Assembly: GCA_026936335.1 (NCBI GenBank)
Contig: JAPMXV010000027.1
Location: 161,533-225,532 of the forward strand
Direction: 5' to 3'
DNA: 64,000 bases
Origin: Mantamonas sphyraenae STR306
Taxonomy: Eukaryota > Protista > CRuMs
Shown here: positions 1-64,000 of the stretch, piece by piece
How the letters are laid out: every line of letters begins with the position of its first letter
Position numbering within the stretch: position 1 is the first letter of the stretch
The notes under the pieces: generated by a model
What the model saw: the letters and a program-made list of their open reading frames with translations, nothing else
The model's database searches: none
What the model was told of the DNA's origin: nothing
Program-made: the position numbers and the translations under genes

Positions 1-1
1 T

Positions 2-3000
2 GTCAACTTTGACGGCAGCGACACGCTGTCGGTTGCCACTCGAGACTATGGAAACACGGGCTCCGGTCCTGAGGGCACCCACAGCGTCACCATCGGCATT
101 ACCGTCATCGGCGTCAACGATCTCATCGAGTTTTCCAACCCGGCAACAGCCTCTGTTGACGAAGACACGGATCTCACTCTTGCTGGCATCAGCGTCAGCG
201 ACAGTGACGCCTATGCAAACGCCGTGCGTGTCAACGTCAGCGTGTCGTCTGGCACGGTGACCCTGGCCCAGACCACGGGCTTGACGCTGCTCAGCGGCTC
301 AGGCTCTGCAGACGCCTTTGTCGAAGTCCTGGGCACGCTGACCAACATCAACGCCGCCCTGAACAACCTCGTGTACCGTGCAAGCACGCACTACAACGGC
401 CCAGAAACCATCCTGCTGGGTGCAGCCGATCTCGGCGCTACCGGCACGCCTGGGCCAACGAGCTCGTTCAGCAATGTCTCGGTCACCGTCGCCGCTGTGA
501 ACGATGCACCTGTGCTGACCGTTCCCGCGGCCACTCAAACCACCCTGGAGGATGTGGCACTTACAATCACTGGTGTCAGCGTAAGCGACGTCGATGTGGC
601 TGCCGCAAATGTCAATGTGACTCTCTCCGTCTCTTCGGGTGTCCTCTCCCTCGGCTCCACAACAGGCCTGACTTTCGGCTCGGGCGACGGCACCGCAGAT
701 CGCTCCATGTCCTTTGAGGGCACGCTCACAAGTGTCAACGCAGCCCTCGCGGCATCGGGCGTCGTGTACCTCGGCGATGCAAACTACAACGGGCCCGACG
801 GCCTCTATGTTGAAGTGGACGATGGAGGAGCCACGGGACAGGGTGGCGTGCAACGGAACAGCACCACGGTGGCCCTGTATGTCGAGGGAGTCAACGACCC
901 GCCTGTGCTCACAAGTATCAGCGCACAAACCGTCGACGAAGACACGGATCTGACCATGTCCGGCTTTGCCATCACGGATTTGGACGTCGGTTCCCTCCCG
1001 CTGCAGGTCAACATCAGCGTAAGCCAGGGTGTGCTCACCGTCGGCTCTCTTGCAGGCCTCACGTTTGTGCAAGGGGACGGCTCCGCAGACGCACAGATGC
1101 GCTTCCAGGGTTCGCTTACCGCCGTCACGGCCGCTCTCAACGGCCTCGTGTACCGCGGCAACCTGCACTTCAACGGCGCAGACACCCTCAGCGTGGGTGT
1201 GGATGACCGTGGCAACGTGGGTCTTGGTGGCTTCCTCACAGATGCTGCCACGGTGGCCATCACCGTGGAGGCCGTCAACGACGCGCCTGTGCTCACCGTG
1301 CCTGGTTTGCAGGCAGCCACTGAGGATGTGCAGCACACCATCAGTGGCGTGAGCGTGTCCGATGTCGACGTCGCTGCAGGCCTGATGAGTGTCAACCTCA
1401 CAGTCACGGCAGGCACCCTGTGGCTTCCCACAACCACCTCGCTCACCTTTGCTCTTGGCGACGGCACCAACGACCGCCGCATGGAGATGACGGGCACGCG
1501 CACCGCACTGAACACAGCCCTGGCCGCCATTGTGTACCAAGGCGACCTTCACTGGAACCAGGGTGACACGGTCACCGTGGACGTGCACGACTACGCGCAG
1601 ACAGGCAAGGGAGGCCAGCTTGCCGACACAGCAACCATTCCCATCAACTTTGTGGCTGTCAACGATGCGCCTGTACTCACGGTGCCACCTGCTCAAGCGG
1701 GTTCGGAAGATGTCGACCTCCCCATCACGGGCATCAACATCACCGATGTCGACGTGGCAGGAGGCCAGCTGCGTGTCCAGATCGGCGTCACATCCGGTGT
1801 GTTGACCCTGGCCACCACGGTCGGGCTCAACTTTGCCTCCGGAGGTGGCTTTGCGGACGCAAGCATGGACTTCCAAGGCACGCTGACCCAGGTCAACAAC
1901 GCTTTGGCCACAGTCACCTATCTCACCGACCTGCACTACAACGGCAACGATGCCGTTTCCATTGCCGTGTACGATCAGGGCAACACAGGTGTGGGTGGCG
2001 TCCTGCAGGACTCGGGCAACATCCCGCTCACGCTTCAGGCCGTCAACGACGCACCTACCTTTGGTGTGCCTGGTACGCAGAATGTGGACGAGGACACAGA
2101 TCTCACCATTTACTTGGTGGGATTCATCGTTTCCGACGTGGATCTGTTCGGCGCAGATGTGCAGGTCAACCTTTCGTGTGCCTCGTGTCTGATGAACCTG
2201 ACCACCACCACGGGCCTGGAATTCGTGGTCGGCGATGGCTTCCTCGACCCGTTCATGTCCTTTACCGGCACTCGCACAGAGGTGAACAACGCCATCACAA
2301 CCGTCGTTTACCGTGGCGAACCCAACTTCAACGGTTTCGACGCCGTGACGGCGGTCGTATCCGATCGTGGCTTCACCGGTTTTGGCGGTGAACAGTTTTC
2401 CACCGACCAAACTGCAATCGTTGTGAACCCGGTGAACGACGAGGTCATCATCACCATTCCGTCGGCCCTGTTTGTGTCCGAGGACATTGCGTACAGCATC
2501 GACAGCGTCAGCATCACCGACGTGGACATCGGGTCCGGCATCATGTCGGCCAACTTGTCTGTGAGCCACGGTTTGTTGCAGCTCGCATCCACCGAAGGCC
2601 TGACCTTTGCAGAGGGCAGTGCCGCACCCGGGCGTGTTTTCCGCTTGGATGGCAACGTGACCAACATTGCCAAGGCGCTTCTGAACATGACCTACACGAG
2701 CGACCTGCACTACCACGGCACAGACTACCTCTACATCGAGGCGACGGACAACGAGATTGGCAACGCCACGTTTACATGGAAGTACCTGGCCATCAACGTG
2801 GAGTCAGTCAACGATGCGCCTGTGCTCAGCGTGCCTGGCGCACAGGCGGTGAGCGAAGACGTGGCCATCACCCTCAATGGGATCAACGTCACCGATGTGG
2901 ACGTGGATGCAGCCACCATGTTCTTCAACATCACGGCTGACCATGGTGTCATGTCCCTGGCCACCACCACGGGCTTTGCCATGACGTTTGGAGACGGAAC

Positions 3001-6000
3001 AGCCGACACGGCCATGCGCTTCACAAGCACTTTGACCAGTTTCAACACGGCTATGGCCGGTGGGCTCGTGTACCAGGGCAACCTGCACTTCAACGGCATC
3101 GAGACAATCCACATCACAGCCAGCGACCAGGGCAACACAGGCGTCACCGGAGGTGTGCAGCAGGATCTGCGCACCATTGTCATCAACGTGACTGCCGTCA
3201 ATGACGCTCCCGTGTGGACGGTGCCTTCTGCACAGACTGTGGACGAGGATGTCACCTTGAACATCACAGGCATCTCGTTGAGTGATGTCGATGTCGAGGC
3301 TCTCCCCATGGAGGTTAGCCTGCGCGTGTCCAACGGCACCTACAACCTTGCCTCCACAGCAGGCCTGACCTTTACGACGGGCACAGGCGCAAACGACCGG
3401 GAAACCGTGCTGCGTGGCTCTCTGACCGACATCAACGCCGCCCTGGTGTGGTTGACCTACACCGGCGACTTTGAGTTCTCCGGTTTGGACACTCTCCAGC
3501 TCAGTGTCAACGATCTTGGCCACGTCGGCGACGTCGGGCCGCTCTCCGACGCTGCCTCGGTGCCCATCAATGTCGTGATCATCAACGACGCCCCACAGCT
3601 CTCCGTGAGCAGCTCCCAATCCGTTAGTGAAGACACAGACGTCACGATTGCAGGCATGAGCGTGACCGATGTGGATGTGTTTGACCAGTCCATGCGTCTC
3701 AACGTGTCGGCTTCCAACGGTGTCGTCACTTTTGTCACCACCACAGGACTGTCGTTCCTGTCCGGCACCAGCAACGGCGCATCGCTGCTCAACGTGCGCG
3801 GCACAGTGACTCAGATCAACGCAGCCCTGGGCACGGTCGTCTACCGTGGCAACCTGCATTGGTACGGCCAAGACCAGCTGCAGATTGCCGTCGACGATGA
3901 GGGCAACACAGGAAACGGGGGCGTCCAGAGCGCCTCTGGCGTCGTCAACGTCACTGTTACGGCTGTCAACGACGCGCCTGTGCTCCAGGCAGTCAGCGAT
4001 CAGACGGTGAACGAAGACACAGATCTGACCATTGCTGGTATTGGTGTGAGCGACGTGGATGTGTACGCCGTGCCACTTGAGGTCAACGTCAGCGTGTCGC
4101 AGGGAGTGCTCTCGCTGCCCAACACGGCCGGTTTGACATTCTTGGTTGGCGACGGCCAAGACGATGCCTTTATGCGCATTCGCGCCACCGTGACCAACAT
4201 GCACGCTGCCCTGTCACCTATTGTGTACCGTGCGGCCCAGGATTACAACGGAGCAGACACGCTGCAGGTCAGCGCCAGCGATTTGGGCGAGTCTGGCTTT
4301 GGTGGCGAGCTGCGTGATGCCTTTACAGTGGGCATCACCGTGCAGGCCGTCAACGATGTGCCCATCTTTGGCATCATCACTGACCAGGCCGTCAACGAGG
4401 ACACAGACTTGACCATGCTGGGCATCACCGTCACCGACGTCGATGTCTTTGCTGGTGCTCTTACCGTCAACGTGAGCGTCGGCCACGGAGTGCTCACCCT
4501 CCCCAACACGGCTGGTCTCACGTTTAGCCGCGGCGACGGTACGCAGGACCCTGTGCTCACTTTCACGGCGGACGTGACCACGGCCACCGCGCGTCTGGGC
4601 ACCATTGTGTACCGCGGTGATGTCAACTACAACGGCGCCGACGCGCTGGTGCTGTATGTCAACGACAACGGTGCCACTGGTCTGGGCGGACCTCTGTCGT
4701 CCACGCAGACCATCAACCTGAACGTCGTCCCGGTCAACGACGCGCCCGTACTGACTGTGCCCGTGGGCTCGATCACCTCTGAGGATGTGATCGGTTTCTT
4801 CAACGGCATGAGCGTCAGCGACGTGGACGTTGCGAATGCGATTGTCAGCGTCAACATCACTGCAACGCTGGGCCTGGTGATGACCGGTGGCACGACCACG
4901 GGACTCACGTACACCGTAGGCAACGGCGCCTCATTCTTCCCCGAGCTGCGCTTCTACGGCACCCTGACCCAAATCAACGCTGGCATCTCCACCATGCGCT
5001 ACCTGCCGCTGGCCGACCGCAACGGCGACGACTTTGTGCAGGTGAGCGTGTCTGATGGCGGTGCCACGGGTCTGGGAGGCGCACTGTTCGACCAGGCCGT
5101 GTGGGTGGTCAACGTCACTGCCGTGAACGACGCACCCGTGTGGTCTCTGCCTACAGGTGGCACACCCGTTGTCCTCGAGGAGAACGACTTGATCATCACG
5201 GGCGTCGACGTGAACGACGTCGATGTCAAAGACCGTGTCATGGCGTTCAACATCAGCAGCGGCATTGGTCTCATTACGCTGAATAGCACTGCAGGGTTGA
5301 CGTTTGAGAGCGGAGACGGCGTGGCAGACGCGTACATGCGCTTCTACAGCACCCTGACGGCTGCTCGCAACGCAGTGCAGCAGCTTGTGTACCGCTCGCA
5401 ACCGAACCTGCACGGAAACGACGTGCTTGTGTTCACTGCCGACGACCAGGGAGCACTGGGCGCAGGCGGTGCGCTGATCCACAATGTCACGTACAATGTG
5501 TTTGTGACATCCGTGAATGACGCCCCGGAGGTGATCCTGCCCAGCCAGGGTACGGTGGCCGAAGAAGCGGATCTCAGCATTGCCGGTGTCAGCCTGACTG
5601 ATGTCGACGTGGGTGCCTCTACGTTGTATGTCAACATGAGTGTGGGAAGCGGTGTGTTGTCGCTGGCGACCACCACAGGTCTCACCTTTACGCTGAACTT
5701 GGGTGTGCCCATCGGCGACGGCGTCCAGGACCGAGTGATGGACTTTTCGGGCACCCTGACTGCCATCAACGCAGCCCTGGCCACAGTTGTGTACACGGGA
5801 AACCAGCACTACTTTGGCACCGACTTTTTGTACATCGGTGTGCGTGACGGCGGAGCCAGCGGCGCAGGAGGCGAATTGAGCGGGAGCAACACCATGACCA
5901 TTACCGTCGTGGGTGTCAACGATGCTCCTGTGGTCATTGCCCCAAGTACGGCCACGGCAACCGAGGATGTCGACCTGGTCGTTGCAGGTGTGGCCGTGAG

Positions 6001-55100: not shown

Positions 55101-58100
55101 AGGAGACACGATCACGGTGACAGTGAACGACCAGGGAGCAAGTGGCACGGGTGGAGCACTGGGCGACACGCGCACGATTGGTGTGAGTGTGAGTGCGGTG
55201 AACGACGCGCCTGTGTTGACTGTGCCTGGTGGACAGAACGTGAACGAGGACGTTCAGTTGACGATCACGGGTGTTTCGGTGACCGACGTCGACGTGGGTG
55301 CAGGGCTGCTGCAAGTCAACGTGAGTGTGGCTTCCGGCCGTGTGTGGTTAAAGTCCCTGGCCGGCCTTGGAGTGGAAGCAGGCAGTGGCAGCGGTGATGC
55401 CAGCCTGCGTGTGGTCGGCAACCTGACGTCTGTGAATGCGGCGCTGTCCGAGATGGTGTACCAGGGCAACCTGCACTTTGTGGGTGCCGACAGCGTTGCG
55501 ATTGCAGTGAACGATCTGGGCAACACCGGGTCGGGTGGTGCTTTGGGCGATGCACAGAGCATTGCGGTGACTGTGGCAGGTGTGAACGACGCGCCTGTGC
55601 TGAGTGTGCCGAGTGCGCAGAGCGGCATGGAGGACACGGACATTGCGCTCGGTGGCATCAGCGTGAGCGATGTGGACGTGGCTGCGAACGAACTTGTGGT
55701 TGATCTGCAGGTGAGCAGCGGTGTTCTGACGCTTGGCGGCACGACGACGGGCCTGACGTTTGTGACGGGCGGTCCGTCGCTGAACGCCGTGATGCGCTTC
55801 CGAGGCAGCCTGACGAACATCAACACGGCGATGAGCAGTGTGGTGTACCGTGGCAACACGCACTACAACGGAGCGGACACGGTGCTGGTTACTGTGAACG
55901 ACCAGGGAGCCGTGGGCATTGGTGGTGCTCTGAGCGATACGGCCAATGTGTCTGTGACTGTGAATGCTGTGAACGACGCACCTTCCGTCGCTGTGGGTGG
56001 AGCCCAGAATGTGGATGAAGACGAACTCCTCGGTGTCACAGGGATCTCTGTGGCCGATGTGGATGTCGCTGGAACAAGCATGACGGTGAACGTAAGCGTG
56101 AGCCGTGGTGTGTTGACCCTGGGTTCGTCGACGGGACTTGTGTTTTCAAGTGGCGACGGAGCTGCTGATGCGTCGATGGTGTTTTCAGGCACGCTGACGA
56201 GTGTGAACAGTGCGTTGGCGACGCTGCAGTACCAGGGCAACCTGGACTTCAACGGATTGGACAACGTGGTCGTTGGCGTTAGTGACAACGGAGGTACTGG
56301 AGCTGGTGGGGCTCTGTCAGCTTCCGCCAGCAAGCTTCTGGTTGTGAACGCGGTGAACGACAAGGTGAACATCACGGTGCTGGACACGCAGAGCGTGAAC
56401 GAGGACACGGACCTGAGCATGTATGGCATCAGCATCTCTGATGTGGACATTGGAGGCGACACGATGCTTGTGAACGTGACGGTGACGGAGGGCCTTGTGA
56501 GCCTTGGCAGCACTGCAGGGTTGACGTTTACGCAGGGTGACGGTGCGGCGGACGCGGATGTGCGCTTCTCGGGCAACCTGACGGCAATCAACGCGGCGCT
56601 GAACGGCCTTGTGTATCGCGGTGCGCAGCACTGGAATGGTGCTGAGCTGCTGCGTGTGTGGGCGTCTGATCAGGGCTTCGGCAGTGCGAACGGCACGGTG
56701 ACGGAGACGGAGAAGCTTCAGGTGATCAACGTGCTTGCTGTAAACGACGCGCCTGTGATCGGTGTGACAAGCAGCAGCGTGGCGACGGCTGAGGATGTGA
56801 GCGTGAATGTGACTGGCCTGAGTGTGAGTGACGTTGACGTGATGGCATCTGCAGTGTCTGTGAATCTGACTGCGACCAGTGGTGTGATGACGCTCGGATC
56901 GACGAGTGGGCTCGCTTTCACGCTTGGCAGTGGCAACTCGAACAAGGAGATGCAGTTCTCGGGCACCTTGACTGCAGTGAACGCTGCGTTGGCATCTGGC
57001 GTGTCGTATGTAGGAGATGTGCATTTCAACGGGGCTGACAGCATTGTGGTGACTGTGAGTGACCAGGGTGCAAGTGGATCTGGTGGAGAACAGACGGCAA
57101 CGGCGACGATCGCTGTGAGCGTGAGCGCTGTGAATGACGGGCCTGTATTGAGTGTGCCCAGTGCACAGAACGCGGTGGAGGACACTGATCTGACGATCGG
57201 TGGCATTAGCGTGAGTGACGTGGATGTGGCGGGCAGCAACGTGCGTTTCAACGTGAGCGTTAGCAACGGTCGCGTTTGGTTGGCAAGCACGACGGGCCTT
57301 GTGTTCGCAGAGGGCGACGGAGTGTCTGATGTGCGTGTGCGTGCAGAGGGCACGCTGACCCGCGGTGAACGCGGCACTTGCCAGCGTTGTCTACCACGGC
57401 GATGCCAACTTTGTCGGTGTGGATAGCCTGCTTGTCTCTGTGGATGACAATGGCAACACCGGAAGTGGTGGCGTTTTGTCTGCGTCGAATGTGGTGAGTA
57501 TCGTGGTCGCGAGTGTGAACGATGGACCTGTGCTGAGCGTGCCTGGTGGTCAGAGCGCTGTGGAAGACACGACGCTGGTGATCAACGGGATCAGTGTGAG
57601 CGACACGGACGCGGGAACGGGACAGATGTACTTCAATGTGACGAGCGTGAACGGTGTTGTGACTTTTGGCACAACCACGGGTTTCACGTTTGTGGTTGGC
57701 GACGGAGTGTCAGACAGCCATGTGGAGTTCACGGCATCGCAGCAGGCGTTCAACGCGTCGATGATTGCGAGTGGCCTGGCGTATCGTGGAAACGCCCACT
57801 TTGAAGGAGCAGATATGATCACGTTGACAGTGAATGATCAAGGCAACACGGGCGGATCGGCATTGAACGACACGCGCACGATTGGTGTGAGTGTGAGTGC
57901 GGTGAACGACGCGCCTGTGCTGACTGTGCCTGGTGGACAGAACGTGAACGAGGAGACCGACCTGACGATCGGTGGTATCAGCGTTGCAGATGTGGACGCA
58001 GCTGCCGGTGTGGTTGCCGTGAACGTGAGTGTGACGTCTGGTCAGATGTGGCTGGGCAGCACGAGCGGCCTTGTGTTTGGTGCTGGCAACGGCAGCAGCG

Positions 58101-61100
58101 ACGCAACGGTGCGTTTCACGGGCACGTTGACCAACGTGAACGCAGCGCTGACGAACCTGGTGTATCGTGGCAACGCGAACTTCCAGGGCACGGACAGCGT
58201 GGTGTTGAGTGTGAACGATCTGGGCAACACGGGCGCGGGTGGAGCGCTGGGTGACAGTGCCGTGATTGTGGTGACTGTGGCCGAAGTGAACGACGCGCCT
58301 GTGCTGACGTGGTGGCCGAGTGTGAGTGTGAACGAAGACACGAGCAGACGCTGGCTGGGTCTGAGCGTGGTCGATGGCGACGGTGCAGCGCGCGCATGCG
58401 ACTGCAACTTGAGTGTGTCACAGGGTGTGTTGAGCCTGGGTGCATCTGTCTCGGGGTGTGTTTGCAGTCTGGTGACGGCGTATTGCTGACAGCACGATTG
58501 ATAGTGCAACGGCACGGTGACGGAATGTGAATGCGGCTTTGTTTGAATGTGGTGTATACGTGGCAAACAGCAACTACAACGGAGCGGATACCCTGGCTGT
58601 GTTTGTGGACGACCTCGGTAACAGTGGGTCTGGGAGGAGCACTGAACGACACGGCGAACGTGGCGATCACAGTTGTGGCTGTGAACGACGGCCCTGTGCT
58701 GAGTGTTGTGTCTGCACAGAGTGTTGCTGAGGACGTGGATCTGACGATCAACGGCATCAGCGTGACGGACGTGGACGTTGCAGGGAACGCATTGCAGGCG
58801 AACGTGAGCGTGAGCCAGGGTGTGGTGACCGCAGTGACGACGACGGGCCTGACATTCAGTGTGGGGCGACGGTGCGTCGGACGCGACGATGAGCTTCACG
58901 GGCACGCTGACCCAGGTGCAGACGGCACTGGGTGTGCTGGTGTACCGCGGGGCACAGGATTACAACGGCGCAGACACGCTTGTGGTGCGCGTGAGTGACC
59001 TGGGGCAACGGTGGGTGTGGGCGGAGAGTTGACAGACAGCGGCCAGCGTGGGCATCACGGTGACGCAGGTGAACGACCGCCCTGCCATCACACCTGTGGG
59101 GTGGAGTGAACGTGGACGAGGACACGGATCTGACGATTGCAGGCATCACTGTGACGGACATTGACGTGGGCGGAGAGTCCATGGAGATGAACTTGACGGT
59201 GACGCATGGTGTGCTGACGAGCGTGAACGCAGGCGGCGTGACGTTTGTGTCTGGCACGAGCAAACGGAGGACGCAGTCTGGTGCTGAACGGCACGGTGAC
59301 GGCGCTGAACGCGGCCATCGGGCAGGTGGTGTACCACGGCGACCTGCACTTCTTTGGCAGCGACTCGCTCGAACTGAGCGTGCGCGACAAGGGCAACACG
59401 GGAGCCGGCGTGAGCAGACAGACAGCCAGAGTGTGGCGATCACTGTGAATGGTGTGAACGATGCGCTGGTGATCACTCTGCCGAGTGCACAGAGTGTGGC
59501 TGAGGACACGGATCTGACGATTGGTGGCATCAGCGTGAGCGATGTGGACGTGGCCGGATTTGCGTTCCGAGTGAACGTGAGTGTGAGCGCAGGCAGCCTG
59601 TGGCTGGGCAGCACGACGGGTCTGACGTTTGGCAGTGGCGACGGAGTGAACGACACGTGGATTGTGTTTGACGGATCGATCACGGCTGTGAACGCAGCAC
59701 TGTCGAACATGGTGTAACCGTGGAGTGACACAGTACAACGGAGCAGACGGGCTTGTTGTGTGGGTGTCTGACCAGGGAGCAGTCGGCAGCGGGTGGTGAG
59801 CAGGTGTCGAACAAGACGCTTGTGATCAACGTGGTGGCTGTGAACGCGCACCTGTGCTGAGTGTGCCTGGGGCACAGAGCACGGCCGAGGACACTGCGCT
59901 GACAGTGAGCGGCGTGAGTGTGGCGGACGTGGACGTCGCGGGTGGAGCGATGAACGTGAACGTGAGTGTGGAGTGCTGGCCGAGTGTGGCTGGCGAGCAC
60001 GAACGGCCTTGTGTTCAGTGCAGGCACGACGGCAGCAGCGACGGACGGGTGGAGTTCAGCGGCAGCGTGACGGATGTGAACAACGCGCTGGCGACAGTTG
60101 TGTACATGCCGGACAGTGCGTTCAACGGAGTGGACAGCATTGTGGTGAGCGTGAACGACGGTGGCAACACGGGCAGTGGCGGAGTGCTTGGAGACAGTGG
60201 CCAGCATTGTTGTGACTGTGTCCGAGCGTGAACGACGCGCCTGTGCTGAGTGTGCCGAGTGGACAGAGCGGCGTTGAGGACACGGATCTGACGATTGGTG
60301 GGATCAGCGTGAGCGATGTGGACATTTGCGGGCAGTCTGCTGCTGGTGAACGTGAGCGCAAGCCAGGGTGTGGTGACACTGGGCAGCATGAGCGGCGTGA
60401 CGATTGTGGACGGAGCAGCATCGGGCACGAAGGATGTGCGCTTTGTGGCGACGCTGACAAACGCAAAAACGCGGCGCTGAAACAACATTGTGTACCGTGG
60501 AGACGCGCAGTACAATGGAGGAGACACGATCACGGTGACAGTGAACGACCAGGGAGCAAGTGGCACGGGTGGAGCACTGGGCGACACGCGCACGATTTGG
60601 TGTGAGTGTGAGTGCGGTGAACGACGCGCCTGTGCTGACTGTGCCTGGTGGGACAGAACGTGAACGAAGGAGACCGACCTGACGATCGGCGGTATCAGCG
60701 TGGCAGATGTGGACGCAGCAGCCGGTATGGTTGCCGTGAACGTGAGGTGTGACGTCTGGTCAGATGTGGGCTGGGCAGCACGAGCGGCCTTGTGTTTTGG
60801 TGCTGGCAACGGCAGCAGCGACGCAAACGGTGCGCTTCACGGGCACGTTGACCAACGTGAACGCAGCGCTGACGAACCTGGTGTATCGTGGCAACGTGAA
60901 ACTTCCAGGGCACGGACAAGCGTGGTGTTGAATGTGAACGATCTGGGCAACACGGGGCGCGGTGGAGCGCTGGGAAGACAGTGCCGTGATTGTGGTGACT
61001 GTGGCCGAAGTGAACGATGCGCCTGTGATGACCGTGGTTGTCGAGTGAGTTGTGAACGAAGACGCGAGATTGCCACGCTGTCTGCGCGTGGTCGATGGCG

Positions 61101-64000
61101 ACGTTCGGACGTCAGCGCGTGCATGCACTCAACTTGAGTGTGTCTCAGGGCGTGCTTAACCTTCCGGGTGCATCTGTCTCGGGGGTGGTATTTCAGCTCT
61201 GGCGATGGTATTGTCTGATGGGCAAACTGTTGATATGCAAGGCAACGTGACTGCCGCTGAATGCGGCGGCTTTGGACAGTGTGTGTCGCGCCAAACACGC
61301 ACTACAACGGGGCGGACACCCTTGTGTGTTTGTGGACGATCCCCGGCAACAGTGGTCTGGGAGAGTGTGCAGTCGGACGGCGCAAACGTGGCGATCACAG
61401 TTGTGGCTGTGAACGACGGCCCTGTGCTGAGTGTTGTGTCTGCACAGAGTGTTGCTGAGGACGTGGATCTGACGATCAACGGCATCAGCGTGACGGACGT
61501 GGACGTTGCAGGCCAACGCATTGCAGGCGAACGTGAGCGTGAGCCAGGGTGTGGTGACCGCAGTGACGACGACGGGCCTGACATTCAGTGTGGGCGACGG
61601 TGCGTCGGACCGACGATGAGCTTCACGGGCACGCTGAACCCAGGTGCAGACGCACTGGGTGTGCTGGTGTACCGCGGGGCACAGGATTACAACGGCGCAG
61701 ACACGCTTGTGTGCGCGTGAGTGACCTGGGCAACGTGGGTGTGGCCGGAGAGTTGACAGACAGCGGCAGCGTGGGCATCACGGTGACGCTGTGAACGACC
61801 GCCCTGCCACACACCTGTGGGTGGAGTGAACGTGGACGAGGACACGGATCTGACGATTGCAGGCATCACTGTGACGGACATTGACGTGGGCGGAGAGTCC
61901 ATGGAGATGAACTTGACGGTGACGCATGGTGTGCTGACGAGCGTGAACGCAGGCGGCGTGACGTTTGTGTCTGGCACGAGCAACGGAGGACGCAGTCTGG
62001 TGCTGAACGGCACGGTGAACGGCGCTGAACGCGGCCATCGGGCAGGTGGTGTACCACGGCGACCTGCACTTCTTTGGCAGCGACTCGCTCGAACTGAGCG
62101 TGCGCGACAAGGGCAACACGGGAGCCGGCGGTGAGCAGACAGACAGCCAGAGTGTGGCGATCACTGTGAATGGTGTGAACGACGCGCTGGTGATCACTCT
62201 GCCGAGTGCACAGAGTGTGGCTGAGGACACGGATCTGACGATTGGTGGCATCAGCGTGAGCGATGTGGACGTGGCCGGATTTGCGTTCCGAGTGAACGTG
62301 AGTGTGAGCGCAGGCAGCCCTGTGGCTGGGCAGCACGACGGGTCTGACGTTTGGCAGTGGCGACGGAGCTGAACGACACGTGGATTGTGTTTTGACGGGT
62401 CGATCACGGCTGTGACGCAGCACTGTCGAACATGGTGTACCGTGGAGTGACACAGTACAACGGAGCAGACGGGCTTGTTGTGTGGGTGTCTGACCAGGGA
62501 GCAGTCGGCAGCGGTGGTGAGCCAGGTGTCGAACAAGACGCTTGTGATCAACGTGGTGGCTGTGAACGACGCACCTGTGCTGAGTGTGCCTGGGGCACAG
62601 AGCACGGCCGAGGACACTGCGCTGACAGTGAGCGGCGTGAGTGTGGCGGACGTGGACGTCGCCGGTGGAGCGATGAACGTGAACGTGAGTGTGAGTGCTG
62701 GCCGAGTGTGGCTGGCGAGCACGAACGGCCTTGTGTTCAGTGCAGGCAACGGCAGCAGCGACGGGCGGGTGGAGTTCAGCGGCAGCGTGACGGATGTGAA
62801 AACGCGCTGGCGACAGTTGTGTCACTATGCCGGACAGTGCGTTCAACGGAGTGTGACAGCATTGTGGTGAGCGTGAACGACGGTGGCAACACCAGTGGCG
62901 GAGTGCTTGGAGAACAGTGGCAGCATTGTTTGTGACTGTGCTGAGCGTGAACGACGCGCCTGTGCTGAGTGTGCCGAGTGGACAGAGCGGCGTTGAGGAC
63001 ACGGATCTACGATTGGTGGCATCAGCGTGAGCGATGTGGACATTGCGGGCAGTCTGCTGCTGTGTGAACGTGAGCGCGCAAGCCAGGGTGTGGTGACAAC
63101 TGGGCAAGCAATGAGCGGCGTGACGATTGTGGACGTGAGCAGCATCGGGCACGAAGGATGTGCGCTTTGTGGCGACGCTGAACAACGCAAACGCGGGCGC
63201 TGAACAACATTGTGTACCGTGGAGACGCGCAGTACAATGGAGGAGACACGATCACGGTGACCAGTGAACGACCAAGGGAGCAAGTGGCACGGGTGGAGCA
63301 CTGGGCGACCAGCGAACGATTGGTGTGAGTGTGAGTGCGGTGAATCACGCACCTGTGCTGACTGTGCCCGGTGGACAAGAACGTGAAACGAGGAGACCGA
63401 CCTGACGATCGGCGGTATCAGCGTGGCAGATGTGGACGCAGCAGCCGGTGTGGTTGCCGTGAACGTGAGTGTGACGTCTGGTCAGATGTGGCTGGGCAGC
63501 ACGAGCGGCCTTGTGTTTGGTGCTGGCAACGGCAGCAGCGACGCAACGGTGCGTTTCACGGGCACGTTGACCAACGTGAACGCAGCGCTGACGAACCTGG
63601 TGTATCGTGGCAACGCGAACTTCCAGGGCACGGACAGCGTGGTGTTGAGTGTGAACGATCTGGGCAACACGGGCGCGGGTGGAGCGCTGGGTGACAGTGC
63701 CGTGATTGTGGTGACTGTGGCCGAAGTGAACGATGCGCCTGTGCTGACGGCACCGGCACTGTGAGTGTGAACGAAGACACGAGCAGTGCCATTGGCGGTC
63801 TGAGCGTGGTCGATGGCGACGTTGGCAGCGCGCGCATGCAACTGCGTCTGAGTGTGTCACAGGTGTGTTGAGCCTGGGTAGCACAAGCGGACTGTTGTTT
63901 GCTGTTGGTGACGGCGTGTCTGACAGCACGATTGAGTGCAACGGCACGGTGACGGATGTGAACGCGGCTTTGGGCAGCGTGACGTACGTGGCCAAAAACA
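2..64000 (+). CDS. Internal part of one giant secreted/surface adhesin-like protein made of ~166 tandem ~128-aa cadherin-like (Ca2+-binding, bacterial-Ig-type) domains; open at both window edges; interrupted by indels that are probably sequencing/consensus errors
   Basis: Frame +2 reads VNFDGSDTLSVATRDYGNTG...GVNDLIEF...ED...DSD from base 2, in frame with ORF 224..7120. Every long + ORF carries the same repeat, with VND[AG]P recurring about every 384-390 nt. Successive ORFs overlap or abut and resume the same domain after a small frame shift. No intergenic sequence, introns or non-repeat domains are seen. Confidence 0.88.
7050..8673 (+). CDS. Fragments of the giant gene (ORFs 7050..8402 and 8230..8673), domains ~19-23
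   Basis: Same repeat. There is an extra G near 8322 (SDLG/TKSMY) and a missing base near 8638 (WNVP/TTRTLDED). Confidence 0.8.
8628..13700 (+). CDS. Fragment of the giant gene, ~12-13 cadherin-like domains
   Basis: 1690-aa ORF of repeats. It shifts near 13438 (GLTF then LGNGTADSNMQLLG in the next frame). Confidence 0.85.
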   Translation: MERPTTRTLDEDTELTVGGGVINIADVDGSGGDIETRVTVDQGRVALANTNGLTFTTGTGAYDTQMIFTGTLDATNQGLYFFIYRPDQDFAGTATVTLWTDDRGNVGTGPSYQRQTTLQFVVNPLNDEPRLLNPIVGTQTVSEDTDLTLTGIGVTDNDVTTQMVEISLSASYGTLTLPTTTGFVFGVGDGIADATMKFNTTMANFNSSMSGSGIVYRGNAHYFGSDVISLNVSDNGISGLPGARTDSSTIVVSVVSINDAPLVTVPAAQAVNEDTDLTLSAATAISVSDVDVGGANVYMELNVTQGAITFVSTTGITFDNACTGTACAVAKLHADLTALNAALATIVYRPGSHYNGADTLGVYAHDNGVQGTGGQLQDYKTVALTVNAVNDAPTITAPGLQVVTEDEKRSLTGLISVSDVDVFANNLRLNLSVANGQLSLDSAVAGLTVVQGNVSADTDLRLLGTLTVLNNALNVLSYTPGLNFEGVDQLSMVIDDNGYTGSGGVLSTSVQMALGVNGANDAPVVNLPATQSVAEDVDLTISGISIADSDIGANQGRVRLNVSHGVLTVVSTSGLSFNLGDGSADTEMQFTGTITQLNLALSSVIYRNNIDYNGDDTILVEANDLGNTGVGGALTASRTLTVQVTPVNDRPAITPVGGVNVDEDTDLTIVGVQVTDIDVLDGSMEMNLTVTHGVLTSVNAGGVTFVSGTSNGGRSLVLNGTVTALNAAIGQVVYHGDLHFFGSDSLELSVRDKGNTGAGGEQTDSQSVAITVNGVNDALVITLPSAQSVAEDTDLTIGGISVSDVDVAGFAFRVNVSVSAGSLWLGSTTGLTFGSGDGVNDTWIVFDGSITAVNAALSNMVYRGVTQYNGADGLVVWVSDQGAVGSGGEQVSNKTLVINVVAVNDAPVLSVPGAQSTAEDTALTVSGVSVADVDVAGGAMNVNVSVSAGRVWLASTNGLVFSAGNGSSDGRVEFSGSVTDVNNALATVVYMPDSAFNGVDSIVVSVNDGGNTGSGGVLGDSGSIVVTVSSVNDAPVLSVPSGQSGVEDTDLTIGGISVSDVDAAAGLVGVKVAAAQGTVSLGSLSGVVFNAGDGVRDAFIDFNATLTNANAALNNLVYLGSQHLVGDDVIAINVTDYGNSGVGGALSDSASFVVTLSAVNDAPTVILPSSPSGNEDSNIAVAGISVSDVDVADNLLAVNLTAGSGTLSLVTFDGISLTGASTGTNDAVLAFAGNITSVNNALANILYRGDANFNGVDQIVVGVEDGGAVGTGGSLYAQASLAITVNGVNDAPTLQVPATQSVLEGTTVTMAGLTLSDIDAASGTMELQLQVTSGLLTLNGATTGLTFVTGGPSLNALMVFRGTLSQLNTSVSSLVYEPAQYFNGQDTVSVLLSDLGFTGIGGTLSTQGSFNITVTPYNNAPTIAVPGAQSTEEDTLVNIVGVSVSDIDAGATPVSVNASAANGVIVLASTTGITFTTGDNSGVALMRFTGTLTDVNTALATLAYTPNNNYFGTDTISVGVNDNGGTGEGGPASSASSFTVLVNAVNDNMNITVLGAQTVNEDTDLTLFGITLTDQDVGTNEILVNLTTNIGTLTLSNTTGLTFLSRQRDGRLQHAALGLAGHHQRRPARSRVPQFAQPERRRHTGHLGVRPWLWQREWHCDHQPESADHQRGPGERRTCAHTQPCLGFRR
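10185..15585 (+). repeat. Diverged copy of the full 14-domain super-repeat (A'-B-C-D-E'-H'-I'-J'-K'-L'-M'-N'-F'-G')
   Basis: Diagnostic motifs occur in the same order as downstream: TTGLTFVTGGPSLNA (I), NDxxNITVL and GFGSANGTVT (K), short GNTGGxAL loop plus FEG (N), NEE...NFQG...TVAEV (F). The span is 5401 nt against 5391 nt for the young 14-mer. Confidence 0.85.
13468..16848 (+). CDS. Fragment of the giant gene: diverged domains, then the start of the homogeneous array
   Basis: 1126-aa ORF. It ends at a 1-nt deletion near 16836 (gttgcggcgga vs gttgcgggcgga in other copies). Confidence 0.85.
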   Translation: MQLLGSLAIINDALHGAVYRSLLNQNGADTLDIWVSDRGFGSANGTVTISQKAQIINVAPVNDAPVLTPSPASVSVDEDSQLTLSGISVADVDVAASSLFFNFTVSRGSLSLGSTTGLLFTLGAGSGDKAMHFTATTTQFASAIAAAGLVYQPDPNYNGVDVLHLLVSDQGATGSGGALTDTATTVITVNAVNDGPTVVVPSSQSAVEDVQLTIAGISVSDIDAGASLVTVNASVSNGQIWLRNTTSLIFALGSGSADVDVRFRGTLTAVNEALSSVVYLAQSHYNGADTLVINVDDNGNSGSGGLLTASASVPLSVAAVNDAPVLTVPAAQSTNEDAAPLVISGISVTDVDAGANAMQFNMSVSSGTITIPTTAGLTFVVGDGVNDRFVSFTTSMTNFNTSMTTGGVAYSGDLNFEGTDTLLVVVSDLGNTGGVALTNTGSVTITVNAVNDAPLITVPGAQVVNEESDLLVSGISVADVDVATGSMSFNASVSNGIIRLGSSVPSLTSISGNNSASLSFTGSLTALNNALATLVYRGSVNFQGVDTLLLGVRDNGNTGSGGELSHAASVSITVAEVNDPPVLTAPSSATANEDVDVTIGGVSVADPDVGGGLMSFNISVSNGVLTLPNRNSGEVFVVGDGVQDGTIHLLGNVTTINAVSSAIVYRANENYNGPDTLSVFVSDRGHSGSGGALSDSANVAITVVAVNDGPVLSVVSAQSVAEDVDLTINGISVTDVDVAGNAFQANVSVSQGVVTAVTTTGLTFSVGDGASDATMSFTGTLTQVQTALGVLVYRGAQDYNGADTLVVRVSDLGNVGVGGELTDSGSVGITVTQVNDRPAITPVGGVNVDEDTDLTIAGITVTDIDVGGESMEMNLTVTHGVLTSVNAGGVTFVSGTSNGGRSLVLNGTVTALNAAIGQVVYHGDLHFFGSDSLELSVRDKGNTGAGGEQTDSQSVAITVNGVNDALVITLPSAQSVAEDTDLTIGGISVSDVDVAGFAFRVNVSVSAGSLWLGSTTGLTFGSGDGVNDTWIVFDGSITAVNAALSNMVYRGVTQYNGADGLVVWVSDQGAVGSGGEQVSNKTLVINVVAVNDAPVLSVPGAQSTAEDTALTVSGVSVADVDVAAER
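16845..27059 (+). CDS. Longest intact fragment (3404 aa): unique X/Y domains, A-G super-repeats and the first H-N cassette
   Basis: Uninterrupted ORF. It ends at a 1-nt deletion near 27008 (gggcagtgg vs gggcaggtgg/gggcaagtgg). Confidence 0.9.
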   Translation: MNVNVSVSAGRVWLASTNGLVFSAGNGSSDGRVEFSGSVTDVNNALATVVYMPDSAFNGVDSIVVSVNDGGNTGSGGVLGDSGSIVVTVLSVNDAPVLSVPSGQSGVEDTDLTIGGISVSDVDIAGSLLLVNVSASQGVVTLGSMSGVTIVDGAASGTKDVRFVATLTNANAALNNIVYRGDAEYNGGDTITVTVNDQGASGTGGALGDTRTIGVSVSAVNDAPVLTVPGPLQVSEDTGLTFSGISVSDLDVGSGLLEVRLNSSIGVMWLINNGGLVFTSECTNGRNCKYMRFQGTLTQVSAALSPMFYEGDPQTFGEEALVLQVSDLGNTGFGGENVVKSAINITVVNVNDLPVPIVPSVFTAFEDTQLNISGLSVTDIDSTTQYINITVEHGTIQLVQTQGLAIVENVNGTESINGTNQILKFYGSITSVNNAIHSFLYNPPPGYSGSDLILFNFHDQPGARENVETENIQLPIYITILAVNNGPVLSVVSAQSVAEDVDLTINGISVTDVDVAGNALQANVSVSQGVVTAVTTTGLTFSVGDGASDATMSFTGTLTQVQTALGVLVYRGAQDYNGADTLVVRVSDLGNVGVGGELTDSGSVGITVTPVNDRPAITPVGGVNVDEDTDLTIAGITVTDIDVGGESMEMNLTVTHGVLTSVNAGGVTFVSGTSNGGRSLVLNGTVTGLNAAIGQVVYHGDLHFFGSDSLELSVRDKGNTGAGGEQTDSQSVAITVNGVNDALVITLPSAQSVAEDTDLTIGGISVSDVDVAGFAFRVNVSVSAGSLWLGSTTGLTFGSGDGVNDTWIVFDGSITAVNAALSNMVYRGVTQYNGADGLVVWVSDQGAVGSGGEQVSNKTLVINVVAVNDAPVLSVPGAQSTAEDTALTVSGVSVADVDVAGGAMNVNVSVSAGRVWLASTNGLVFSAGNGSSDGRVEFSGSVTDVNNALATVVYMPDSAFNGVDSIVVSVNDGGNTGSGGVLGDNGSIVVTVLSVNDAPVLSVPSGQSGVEDTDLTIGGISVSDVDIAGSLLLVNVSASQGVVTLGSMSGVTIVDGAASGTKDVRFVATLTNANAALNNIVYRGDAEYNGGDTITVTVNDQGASGTGGALGDTRTIGVSVSAVNDAPVLTVPGGQNVNEETDLTIGGISVADVDAAAGVVAVNVSVTSGQMWLGSTSGLVFGAGNGSSDATVRFTGTLTNVNAALTNLVYRGNVNFQGTDSVVLSVNDLGNTGAGGALGDSAVIVVTVAEVNDAPVLTAPATVSVNEDTSSAIGGLSVVDGDVGSARMQLRLSVSQGVLSLGSTSGLLFAVGDGVSDSTIECNGTVTDVNAALGSVTYVANSNYNGADTLAVFVDDLGNSGLGGALNDTANVAITVVAVNDGPVLSVVSAQSVAEDVDLTINGISVTDVDVAGNALQANVSVSQGVVTAVTTTGLTFSVGDGASDATMSFTGTLTQVQTALGVLVYRGAQDYNGADTLVVRVSDLGNVGVGGELTDSGSVGITVTPVNDRPAITPVGGVNVDEDTDLTIAGISVTDIDVGGESMEMNLTVTHGVLTSVNAGGVTFVSGTSNGGRSLVLNGTVTGLNAAIGQVVYHGDLHFFGSDSLELSVRDKGNTGAGGEQTDSQSVAITVNGVNDALVITLPSAQSVAEDTDLTIGGISVSDVDVAGFAFRVNVSVSAGSLWLGSTTGLTFGSGDGVNDTWIVFDGSITAVNAALSNMVYRGVTQYNGADGLVVWVSDQGAVGSGGEQVSNKTLVINVVAVNDAPVLSVPGAQSTAEDTALTVSGVSVADVDVAGGAMNVNVSVSAGRVWLASTNGLVFSAGNGSSDGRVEFSGSVTDVNNALATVVYMPDSAFNGVDSIVVSVNDGGNTGSGGVLGDSGSIVVTVLSVNDAPVLSVPSGQSGVEDTDLTIGGISVSDVDIAGSLLLVNVSASQGVVTLGSMSGVTIVDGAASGTKDVRFVATLTNANAALNNIVYRGDAEYNGGDTITVTVNDQGASGTGGALGDTRTIGVSVSAVNDAPVLTVPGGQNVNEDVQLTITGVSVTDVDVGAGLLQVNVSVASGRVWLKSLAGLGVEAGSGSGDASLRVVGNLTSVNAALSEMVYQGNLHFVGADSVAIAVNDLGNTGSGGALDDAQSIAVTVAGVNDAPVLSVPSAQSGMEDTDIALGGISVSDVDVAANELVVDLQVSSGVLTLGGTTTGLTFVTGGPSLNAVMRFRGSLTNINTAMSSVVYRGNTHYNGADTVLVTVNDQGAVGIGGALSDAANVSVTVNAVNDAPSVAVGGAQNVDEDEVLGVTGISVADVDVAGTSMTVNVSVSRGVLTLGSSTGLVFSSGDGAADASMVFSGTLTSVNSALATLQYQGNLDFNGLDNVVVGVSDNGGTGAGGALSASASKLVVVNAVNDKVNITVLDTQSVNEDTDLSMYGISISDVDIGGDTMLVNVTVTEGLVSLGSTAGLTFTQGDGAADADVRFSGNLTAINAALNGLVYRGAQHWNGAELLRVWASDQGFGSANGTVTETEKLQVINVLAVNDAPVIGVTSSSVATAEDVSVNVTGLSVSDVDVMASAVSVNLTATSGVMTLGSTSGLAFTLGSGNSNKEMQFSGTLTAVNAALASGVSYVGDVHFNGADSIVMTVSDQGASGSGGEQTATATIAVSVSAVNDGPVLSVPSAQNAVEDTDLTIGGISVSDVDVAGSNVRFNVSVSNGRVWLASTTGLVFAEGDGVSDVRVRAEGTLTVVNAALASVVYHGDANFVGVDSLLVSVDDNGNTGSGGVLSASNVVSIVVASVNDGPVLSVPGGQSAVEDTTLVINGISVSDTDAGTGQMYFNVTSVNGVVTFGTTTGFTFVVGDGVSDSRVEFTASQQAFNASMIASGLAYRGNTHFEGADVITLTVNDQGNTGGSALNDTRTIAVSVSAVNDAPVLTVPGGQNVNEETDLTIGGISVADVDAAAGVVAVNVSVTSGQMWLGSTSGLVFGAGNGSSDATVRFTGTLTNVNAALTNLVYRGNVNFQGTDSVVLSVNDLGNTGAGGALGDSAVIVVTVAEVNDAPVLTAPATVSVNEDTSSAIGGLSVVDGDVGSARMQLRLSVSQGVLSLGSTSGLLFAVGDGVSDSTIECNGTVTDVNAALGSVTYVANSNYNGADTLAVFVDDLGNSGLGGALNDTANVAITVVAVNDGPVLSVVSAQSVAEDVDLTINGISVTDVDVAGNALQANVSVSQGVVTAVTTTGLTFSVGDGASDATMSFTGTLTQVQTALGVLVYRGAQDYNGADTLVVRVSDLGNVGVGGELTDSGSVGITVTPVNDRPAITPVGGVNVDEDTDLTIAGITVTDIDVGGESMEMNLTVTHGVLTSVNAGGVTFVSGTSNGGRSLVLNGTVTALNAAIGQWCTTATCTSLAATRSN
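17534..18297 (+). other. Unique, AT-richer in-frame segment encoding two atypical domains (X, Y) in place of F-G
   Basis: No other copy in the window. Bases 18001-18060 are 24/60 G+C (hand count), against 38/60 for array-type bases 11461-11520. It encodes TSECTNGRNCKYMRF and AIVENVNGTESINGTNQILKF. Confidence 0.85.
22902..25604 (+). repeat. H-N cassette copy 1 (7 domains, 2703 bp) inserted between E and F
   Basis: H NEDVQLTITG, I SAQSGMED, J NDAPSVAVGG, K NDKVNITVL, L NDAPVIGVTSS, M SAQNAVED, N GGQSAVEDTTL. Confidence 0.93.
27008..35966 (+). CDS. Fragments of the giant gene (ORFs 27008..31519 and 31488..35966): A-G super-repeats
   Basis: Near-identical 896-aa units, with breaks near 31498 and 35964. 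Confidence 0.85.
35965..40190 (+). CDS. Frameshift-fragmented A-G super-repeats of the giant gene
   Basis: Single-base indels near 37502, 38219, 38374, 38930, 39560 and 40187. The sequence is otherwise essentially identical to intact copies. Confidence 0.75.
40191..47629 (+). CDS. Fragments of the giant gene (ORFs 40191..45563 and 45560..47629): A-G units and the second H-N cassette
   Basis: 1790-aa and 689-aa ORFs of the repeat, with a break near 45522. Confidence 0.85.
44418..47119 (+). repeat. H-N cassette copy 2
   Basis: Near-identical to 22902..25604, with a net one-base loss near 45522 and a few substitutions (e.g. QNMDEDEL, GNTAG). Confidence 0.92.
47630..53292 (+). CDS. Frameshift-fragmented A-G super-repeats of the giant gene
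   Basis: A garbled G domain at 47.5-47.9 kb, then small indels near 48466, 49505, 50233, 51570, 52527 and 53281. Confidence 0.7.
53293..58489 (+). CDS. Fragments of the giant gene (ORFs 53293..57426 and 57365..58489): A-E, the third H-N cassette, then F
   Basis: 1377-aa and 374-aa ORFs, with a break near 57361. Confidence 0.82.
55201..57904 (+). repeat. H-N cassette copy 3
   Basis: Near-identical to copies 1 and 2, with one indel near 57361 and private variants (SDTAN, DSHVEF, ADMIT). Confidence 0.92.
58308..64000 (+). CDS. Heavily indel-corrupted continuation of the same repeat array (probably a low-accuracy end of the assembly or read)
   Basis: Domain order G-A-B-C-D-E-F-G-A-B-C-D-E-F-G is still recognisable at nucleotide level, but indels occur every few tens to hundreds of bases. 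Confidence 0.65.

What the first reader, a model, noticed from the sequence alone, without database searches (positions are those of the whole stretch)
2..64000. One titin-scale (>21,000 aa) intron-less gene built only of ~166 cadherin-like domains
Seen: once the indels are corrected, the full 64 kb is one reading frame of ~128-aa domains with neither end visible. Known: VNDAP/xED/DxD linker motifs typify Ca2+-rigidified cadherin-like and bacterial Ig repeats (Pfam Cadherin_4, Cadherin_5, Big_9-like), which act as extender rods in giant adhesins such as Marinomonas MpIBP. Titin is about 34-35 thousand aa. Inference: this is a >2 MDa extracellular rod. At ~4-5 nm per domain the visible part alone would span ~0.7-0.8 micrometre, suggesting a cell-scale tether, coat fibre or capture filament. 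Such a gene is easily missed because pipelines split it into dozens of ORFs.
Basis: partly seen in the sequence, partly recalled or inferred. Interest (0 to 1): 0.85.

Follow-up and report, generated by a model that had tools for sequence, protein, structure and literature searches.

The report
Giant protist surface protein, repeat stalk
This is the middle of a real, transcribed gene of the tiny gliding protist Mantamonas sphyraenae, and it encodes a giant cell-surface rod (about 16,000 to 32,000 amino acids, length unsettled) built on bacterial-style cadherin-like repeats with a eukaryotic head and probably a membrane anchor.

Summary
The window holds 166 in-register ~128-aa cadherin-like domains on the + strand. 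The breaks behave as long-read indel errors: a 99% paralog lacks each one I could compare, copies differ mostly by synonymous changes (70% vs 26% expected), and one break in the paralog is corrected by Illumina. The genome is Mantamonas sphyraenae (CRuMs). The gene is neither intron-less nor cadherin-only. It starts 7.3 kb upstream with a signal peptide, seven RNA-confirmed introns and a LamG-like/PSI/EGF/Big_9 head. The window ends at the contig end. Two paralogs (C27, C29) break in the same 2,688-bp array. C28 and C32 carry matching 3' halves, which lead to Ig-like 'GD' repeats and probably a 3-TM anchor. An unbroken paralog (C44, 9,721-aa frame) and an M. plastica transcript show the whole layout. 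Size is at least 23,500 aa as assembled and up to 30-32,000 aa if joined. Only about 16,000 aa is robust, because the array beyond 26 kb may be partly chimeric. Best reading: a membrane-anchored, Ca2+-stiffened adhesion or capture rod of 0.5-1.1 µm, working like an RTX-adhesin extender but not an RTX adhesin. The scan's first readers had noted this gene's head and sister genes on other pieces of this genome.

The parts
1..15582 (+). Non-repetitive stalk: about 40 different ~128-aa cadherin-like domains, continuing from 6 more upstream of the window. 98-100% identical to the paralog on contig C29.
10566..11717 (+). Outlying copy of array domains B-C-D inside the non-repetitive stalk
15583..17501 (+). 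Partial array unit A-B-C-D-E
17502..18290 (+). Two paralog-specific domains (C27 and C29 differ here); last unique anchor before the array
18291..64000 (+). Higher-order tandem array of 2,688-bp seven-domain units (A-G), 97-99% identical, running to the contig end. Copy number uncertain; part may be a chimeric assembly path.
22899..25601 (+). First inserted block of seven other domain types (F', H-M)
44415..47116 (+). Second F'/H-M block. The 7.3-kb stretch holding it differs by 22 substitutions from the C29 block but by 95 from the first C27 block.
55198..57901 (+). Third F'/H-M block, a distinct variant (58-89 substitutions from the others over 7.3 kb)
7043..16835 (+). Span holding five 1-bp frame-breaking indels (7043, 8322, 8637, 13434, 16835), all absent from the C29 paralog; read as assembly errors
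56000..64000 (+). Error-rich contig end: 31 and 52 indel events per 4 kb, against 0-1 per 4 kb at 12-36 kb

Best explanation
The window is the stalk-coding middle of one expressed gene for a giant secreted, membrane-anchored surface protein of Mantamonas sphyraenae. The order is: signal peptide, LamG-like domain, EGF, a ~240-aa unknown domain, PSI and EGF repeats, Big_9 repeats, about 105-230 cadherin-like domains, an Ig_SibA/Big_9 domain, several Ig-like 'GD' repeats, probably three transmembrane helices, and a cytoplasmic tail. Shown: reading frame, splicing, signal-peptide-like start, fold, acidic linker motifs. Inferred: Ca2+ binds the linkers in seawater and stiffens the stalk into a 0.5-1.1 µm rod. 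That rod would hold the head away from a 3 x 5 µm cell to grip substrate or bacterial prey. Stalk length changes by unequal crossing-over in the array, and the two long paralogs are homogenised by gene conversion.
For: Genome identity: 25.06 Mb, 78 contigs, and a longest contig of 751,365 bp, equal to C29. RNA run X3 skips 7 GT-AG introns in the C27-specific 5' end, and the exon phases join the long frame; X3 holds 0.90 of the sampled words of window 1-6000. Substitutions among copies are 104 synonymous of 148 (expected fraction 0.257, p about 1e-29) with no new stops. C27 and C29 indels are never shared. An Illumina contig carries the base missing at C29:716,256. AlphaFold two-domain model pLDDT 95; E17, D30, D32 and D106 are invariant in 69 aligned tandems. 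Sequence hits in PDB are AhLap 6XI1 (E 3e-14) and protocadherins. C28 and C32 begin in the same array and run into GD repeats and a region homologous to the TM segments of the M. plastica protein P0048. C44 has the same head, stalk and tail in one 9,721-aa open frame.
Against: No read links C27 to C28 or C32. I did not read the 3' end letters, so the TM anchor rests on homology. There is no protein, localisation or Ca2+-binding data, and no ultrastructure exists for Mantamonas (PMC12133344). RNA over window 1-6000 cannot be assigned to C27 rather than C29, and the RNA run has low intronic depth. The head's ligand is unknown; the ~240-aa domain has no family.
Confidence: 0.72

Rival explanations
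1. Same gene and function, but the array is over-assembled. The contig wanders between the two paralogs and their alleles, so the true protein is nearer 16,000-20,000 aa than 23,000-32,000 aa. This concerns size only and is compatible with the best explanation.
For: PacBio read N50 is 11 kb against a 46-kb array. Block 2 is almost the C29 block (22 vs 95 substitutions), and one B-E stretch is identical to C29's over 1,536 bp. The first three C27 units differ by 12-28 substitutions from one another and from the rest, while later units group with C29's. C29-type Illumina contigs have about twice the depth of C27-type ones.
Against: The three C27 H-M blocks are distinct variants with synonymous-biased differences, and six blocks exist in the assembly. 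A variant G domain follows blocks 2 and 3 only. Conversion between paralogs would give the same likeness. A 14-kb array between unique anchors should have been spanned.
Confidence: 0.4
2. The protein is released, by cleavage or lack of an anchor, and works as an extracellular matrix, trail or coat fibre rather than a tethered adhesin.
For: Signal peptide and about 1.8 N-glycosylation sequons per domain. The anchor of this particular gene was not read directly.
Against: Homology of C32 and C28 to P0048 runs through its first TM segment and resumes at the second and third. Relatives in M. plastica and Fabomonas have TM segments.
Confidence: 0.15
3. The C27 copy is a decaying pseudogene, or several shorter genes, and the frameshifts are real.
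For: Dozens of frame breaks in the assembly. No Illumina or RNA read was laid over C27's own breaks. C27-specific RNA contigs have low depth.
Against: Indels are mostly 1 bp, 57 of 79 lie in same-base runs, they are almost never recurrent, and they rise toward the contig end. There are no substitution stops. C27 vs C29 differences are 40 synonymous to 17 non-synonymous. C27 is correctly spliced. No internal starts, signal peptides or introns break the register.
Confidence: 0.08
4. Bacterial contamination: an RTX-type adhesin gene from a co-cultured bacterium assembled into the contig.
For: The domain is bacterial-type, up to 45-46% identical to Photobacterium domains, and the culture is not axenic.
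Against: Spliced GT-AG introns, a PSI/EGF head, a eukaryotic-type SET/ankyrin neighbour, and an ortholog of the C44 paralog in the M. plastica transcriptome.
Confidence: 0.01

Closest known systems
RTX adhesin extender regions (Marinomonas MpIBP region II, Aeromonas AhLap PDB 6XI1)
   Same: Long run of near-identical beta-sandwich domains with acidic linkers. Best PDB sequence hit is AhLap (E 3e-14). MpIBP has ~120 repeats over 0.6 µm and could not be bridged by PacBio either (PMC5550230). Ca2+ stiffens the linkers in these adhesins (PMC7493085).
   Different: Eukaryotic spliced gene with an N-terminal signal peptide. The head is at the N-terminus and the anchor at the C-terminus, the reverse of RTX adhesins. 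The domain is 128 aa with an inserted helix, and repeats come in 7-domain higher-order units.
Metazoan cadherins and protocadherins (CELSR, Fat, CDH23)
   Same: Similar fold (Z 8-8.7) and the DxND-like, xED and DxD acidic motifs; profile hits to Pcdhb8 and CELSR1 at E about 1e-6.
   Different: Matches Pfam Cadherin_4/Big_9, not the Cadherin family PF00028. Longer domain and far more repeats. No catenin-binding tail is known.
Dictyostelium SibA family
   Same: Protist adhesion receptor with bacterial-type repeats (PMC9453864). An Ig_SibA domain closes the stalk here (E 1.6e-5, below cut-off; 48 bits in M. plastica).
   Different: SibA has four repeats, a VWA domain and NPxY motifs. This gene has over 100 repeats, a LamG/PSI/EGF head, no VWA hit and probably three TM helices.
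Drosophila Dumpy (and titin, PKZILLA-1 as size markers)
   Same: Dumpy is a 2.5-MDa extracellular protein (papers listed; its anchored-rod role is from my own knowledge). PKZILLA-1 has 45,212 aa, about 25% larger than titin (10.1101/2024.01.29.577497).
   Different: Unrelated domains (EGF/DPY/ZP in Dumpy, from my own knowledge). This protein is not a size record. It would exceed Dumpy only if the assembled array length is right.
Mantamonas plastica EP00003_P025455 (P0048) and Fabomonas tropica EP00163_P010306 (P0053)
   Same: Same cadherin-like stalk, GD repeats and TM anchor; 43% identical to the C32 3' piece.
   Different: Unannotated and shorter as recorded (20 and 4 stalk domains). P0048 is the ortholog of the C44 paralog (55% over its last 1,300 aa), not of this gene.

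Membership tests
Bacterial cadherin-like domain (Pfam Cadherin_4 / Big_9 group) | Pfam score above the curated cut-off | tested here: met
   Cadherin_4 107-165 bits (cut-off 25.1), Big_9 35-83 bits (cut-off 23.6)
Bacterial cadherin-like domain (Pfam Cadherin_4 / Big_9 group) | Tandem beta-sandwich fold | tested here: met
   AlphaFold pLDDT 95; Atlas match TM 0.92 to a Cadherin_4 cluster
Bacterial cadherin-like domain (Pfam Cadherin_4 / Big_9 group) | Conserved acidic linker residues | tested here: met
   E17, D30, D32, D106, D131 invariant in 69 tandems; motifs in 51/51 domains
Bacterial cadherin-like domain (Pfam Cadherin_4 / Big_9 group) | Actual Ca2+ binding and rigidification | not testable with these tools
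   needs CD, SAXS or a crystal structure
RTX adhesin | Gram-negative bacterial host, T1SS export, no signal peptide | tested here: not met
   eukaryotic spliced gene with a signal-peptide-like start
RTX adhesin | C-terminal RTX repeats and T1SS signal | tested here: inconclusive
   own 3' end not read; the homologous M. plastica C-terminus has TM helices and EF-hands and no RTX hit
Classical cadherin / protocadherin | Pfam Cadherin (PF00028) EC repeats | tested here: not met
   no PF00028 hit at E 0.01-1
Classical cadherin / protocadherin | Single TM and catenin-binding tail | not tested
   3' letters not available; the relative has three TM segments
Sib / integrin-beta-like receptor | VWA domain in the head | tested here: not met
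   no VWA hit in the long head exon or in two 5' exons scanned singly; the shortest exons were not scanned
Sib / integrin-beta-like receptor | NPxY motifs in the tail | not tested
   3' letters not available
Polycystin-1-like (REJ-GAIN) | REJ domain before the membrane | tested here: not met
   no REJ match on C27, C28, C29 or C32; one is present on the cadherin-like gene of C4

The most novel reading that the evidence does not exclude
The assembly is about right and the gene joins C28 or C32, giving a 30,000-32,000-aa (about 3 MDa) membrane-anchored rod of about 1.1 µm on a 3-5 µm cell. That would be among the largest eukaryotic surface proteins described. It would be the longest member of an undescribed, length-graded receptor family (about 5,000, 9,700 and 16,000-32,000 aa) that uses a bacterial adhesin-type extender in an early-branching relative of Amorphea.
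Probability: 0.35. Interest if true: 0.8.

Novelty: new variant of a known kind. Interest (0 to 1): 0.66.

Why it matters
The giant Ca2+-stiffened extender design is known from bacterial adhesins and, with other domains, from animal cadherins and Dumpy. Here it is rebuilt in a free-living protist of the CRuMs group, with a eukaryotic LamG/PSI/EGF head and a membrane anchor, in a family of graded lengths. Mantamonas has no ultrastructural description and its gliding and feeding mechanisms are unknown. The gene predicts visible 0.5-1 µm surface filaments and names a testable candidate. It also bears on where cadherin-type adhesion rods came from. I found no paper describing these genes. The two copies account for four of the broken contig ends of the genome.

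Tried and rejected
The spliced 5' model was searched exon by exon by reference; the joined step was left out. Three family scans and one alignment failed on frame slips and were corrected. The telomere pattern search listed only C1-C3 and was uninformative. DNA searches with array pieces returned incomplete lists; short patterns replaced them. Tandem Repeats Finder misses the array because its period limit is 500. The REJ/polycystin anchor was tested and rejected for this gene. A weak Toxin_R_bind_N hit on exon 2 (E 0.013, below cut-off) is read as the shared LamG/concanavalin fold, not as a toxin. Long minus-strand ORFs are shadows: no minus-strand domain hits.

Full report
Source. The window is G000:C27:161,533-225,532 and ends at the last base of the contig. 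The genome has 25,061,354 bases in 78 contigs, and C29 is 751,365 bp long. These match the FALCON assembly of Mantamonas sphyraenae: 25.06 Mb, 78 contigs, longest 751,365 bp, PacBio RSII reads with N50 11 kb, diploid (PMC10492846).

Observation. The + strand carries 165 detectable domain starts 380-400 bp apart plus one noisy copy, and the minus strand has none. Pfam Cadherin_4, Big_9 and Cadherin_5 match. As assembled, the frame is cut into many pieces, the longest 3,454 codons. From 15.6 kb on, the DNA is a 97-99% identical array of 2,688-bp seven-domain units (A-G), with a second seven-domain block (F', H-M) inserted three times. The window therefore holds about 55 domain types, not 166 different ones.

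Are the breaks real? A paralog on C29 is 98-100% identical over window 1-17 kb. All five C27 frame breaks there are 1-bp indels that C29 lacks, and C29 has its own that C27 lacks. An Illumina contig carries the base that the C29 assembly lacks at 716,256, so that break is shown to be an error. In the array, indels are mostly 1 bp and 57 of 79 lie in same-base runs. They almost never recur, and they rise from 0-1 per 4 kb to 52 per 4 kb at the contig end. Substitutions among copies are 104 synonymous to 44 non-synonymous with no stops, against an expected synonymous fraction of 0.257 (p about 1e-29). C27's own breaks were not tested with reads, so 'errors' is a strong inference for them.

The 5' end. 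The frame begins upstream of the window. An ATG at C27:154,242 starts a signal-peptide-like sequence. Run X3 skips seven GT-AG introns in this C27-specific region, which identifies it as the RNA run, and the exon phases join the long frame. X3 also holds 0.90 of the sampled words of window 1-6000, though that stretch is shared with C29. The 2,150 aa upstream of the window are: a LamG-like domain (sequence pattern plus a weak same-fold hit), EGF, a ~240-aa domain with no family, PSI repeats (E 0.004, weak), teneurin-like EGF repeats, Big_9 repeats and six stalk domains. The spliced model was searched exon by exon; the joined step was left out.

The 3' end. C28 and C32 begin, on the minus strand, in the same array and run into unique sequence that is 99% alike between them. 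The 3.2 kb I could read shows more stalk domains, an Ig_SibA/Big_9 domain and the first 'GD' repeats. GD is a ~125-aa Ig-like domain with no Pfam family of its own (weak Big_5 in 9 of 55 members; model pLDDT 96; best Z 7.7). It also occurs in Andalucia, Mastigamoeba, Thecamonas, Fabomonas and a planctomycete. The M. plastica transcript P0048 has 20 stalk domains, GD repeats, three TM segments and an EF-hand tail. C32 and C28 match it through the first TM segment and again from the second, down to C32:374,857 and C28:69,401. I could not read those letters, so the anchor is inferred.

The family. The same head lies on C27, C29, C44 and C61. C44 has head, stalk, GD repeats and tail in one 9,721-aa open frame, and C61 spans about 16 kb. 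C27 and C29 have unrelated upstream flanks and 5' ends only 66-80% alike, so they are paralogs, not alleles. Their near identity over the stalk points to gene conversion (inference).

Size. From the ATG to the contig end the assembly gives 23,483 aa; adding the visible C28 or C32 half gives about 30,300 or 32,200 aa. The part anchored in unique sequence gives a floor of about 15,900 aa: 10,683 to the end of the first H-M block plus at least 5,238 after the C28 block. The array between is doubtful. It is four times the read N50, and block 2 differs from C29's block by 22 substitutions but from C27's first block by 95. That fits either a chimeric path or conversion. In favour of real length, the three C27 blocks are distinct synonymous-biased variants and six blocks exist in the assembly.

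Mechanism. The tandem folds as two beta-sandwiches, each with a short helix (pLDDT 95). The acidic residues at the junction are invariant. The best solved relatives by sequence are the AhLap extender and protocadherins, where linker Ca2+ gives a rigid rod (PMC7493085). At 4.5-5 nm per domain (MpIBP: ~120 repeats over 0.6 µm, PMC5550230), 105-230 domains give 0.5-1.1 µm on a cell of about 3 x 5 µm. I infer an adhesion or prey-capture rod with the head outermost. Ca2+ binding, surface location and ligand are not shown.

Comparison and verdict. It works like an RTX-adhesin extender but is not an RTX adhesin, a classical cadherin, a Sib protein or a polycystin by the tests above. Bacterial-type repeats in a protist receptor are known from SibA, and a 2.5-MDa extracellular protein is known in Dumpy, so the kind is known. 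The combination, the scale and the graded family appear undescribed; one literature search for Mantamonas with cadherin found nothing relevant. Earlier first-reader notes on this genome reached similar descriptions; they are not independent support. Verdict: real feature, new variant of a known kind, interest 0.66.

Noticed in passing
model of window:22131-22907 vs PDB 9h6j_A residues 141-258: The best structural match of the 128-aa repeat is a domain of human B4GALNT1 (Z 12.9, rmsd 2.9, 22% identity), well above cadherins (Z 8.7 or less). One paper search gave no lead on this link.
   Followed up: partly
L011:2601-8600: In both Illumina DNA runs, C29-type contigs have about twice the depth of C27-specific ones (71 vs 30; 48 vs 24) and a shared stretch about 2.5-3 times. 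C27 may be hemizygous or C29 duplicated; contig depth is a weak measure.
   Followed up: partly
G000:C29 end and C32 end: C29 plus C32 joined at their H-M blocks gives about 1.141 Mb, close to the 1,133,621-bp longest MaSuRCA contig in the genome paper. This hints at a C29-C32 pairing with a shorter or collapsed array; unverified.
   Followed up: no
G000:C4:345988-363257 (-): Another cadherin-like stalk gene, ending in a REJ domain within a 5,897-aa open frame; the genome has about ten strong REJ matches.
   Followed up: no
G000:C13:125760-132695 (-), also C74 and C39: Long arrays of the unnamed GD domain (about 19 copies in a 6,185-aa frame on C13). The domain has 413 relatives at E below 0.001 and no Pfam family of its own.
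   Followed up: partly
window 16001-64000: GC skew jumps from about 0 to +0.25 where the array begins, with third codon positions shifting from C to G, a mark of the converted array.
   Followed up: partly
L009:4292-7300 (G000:C27:135824-138835): Upstream neighbour with a Rubisco-LSMT substrate-binding domain and ankyrin repeats, an ordinary eukaryotic-type gene.
   Followed up: no
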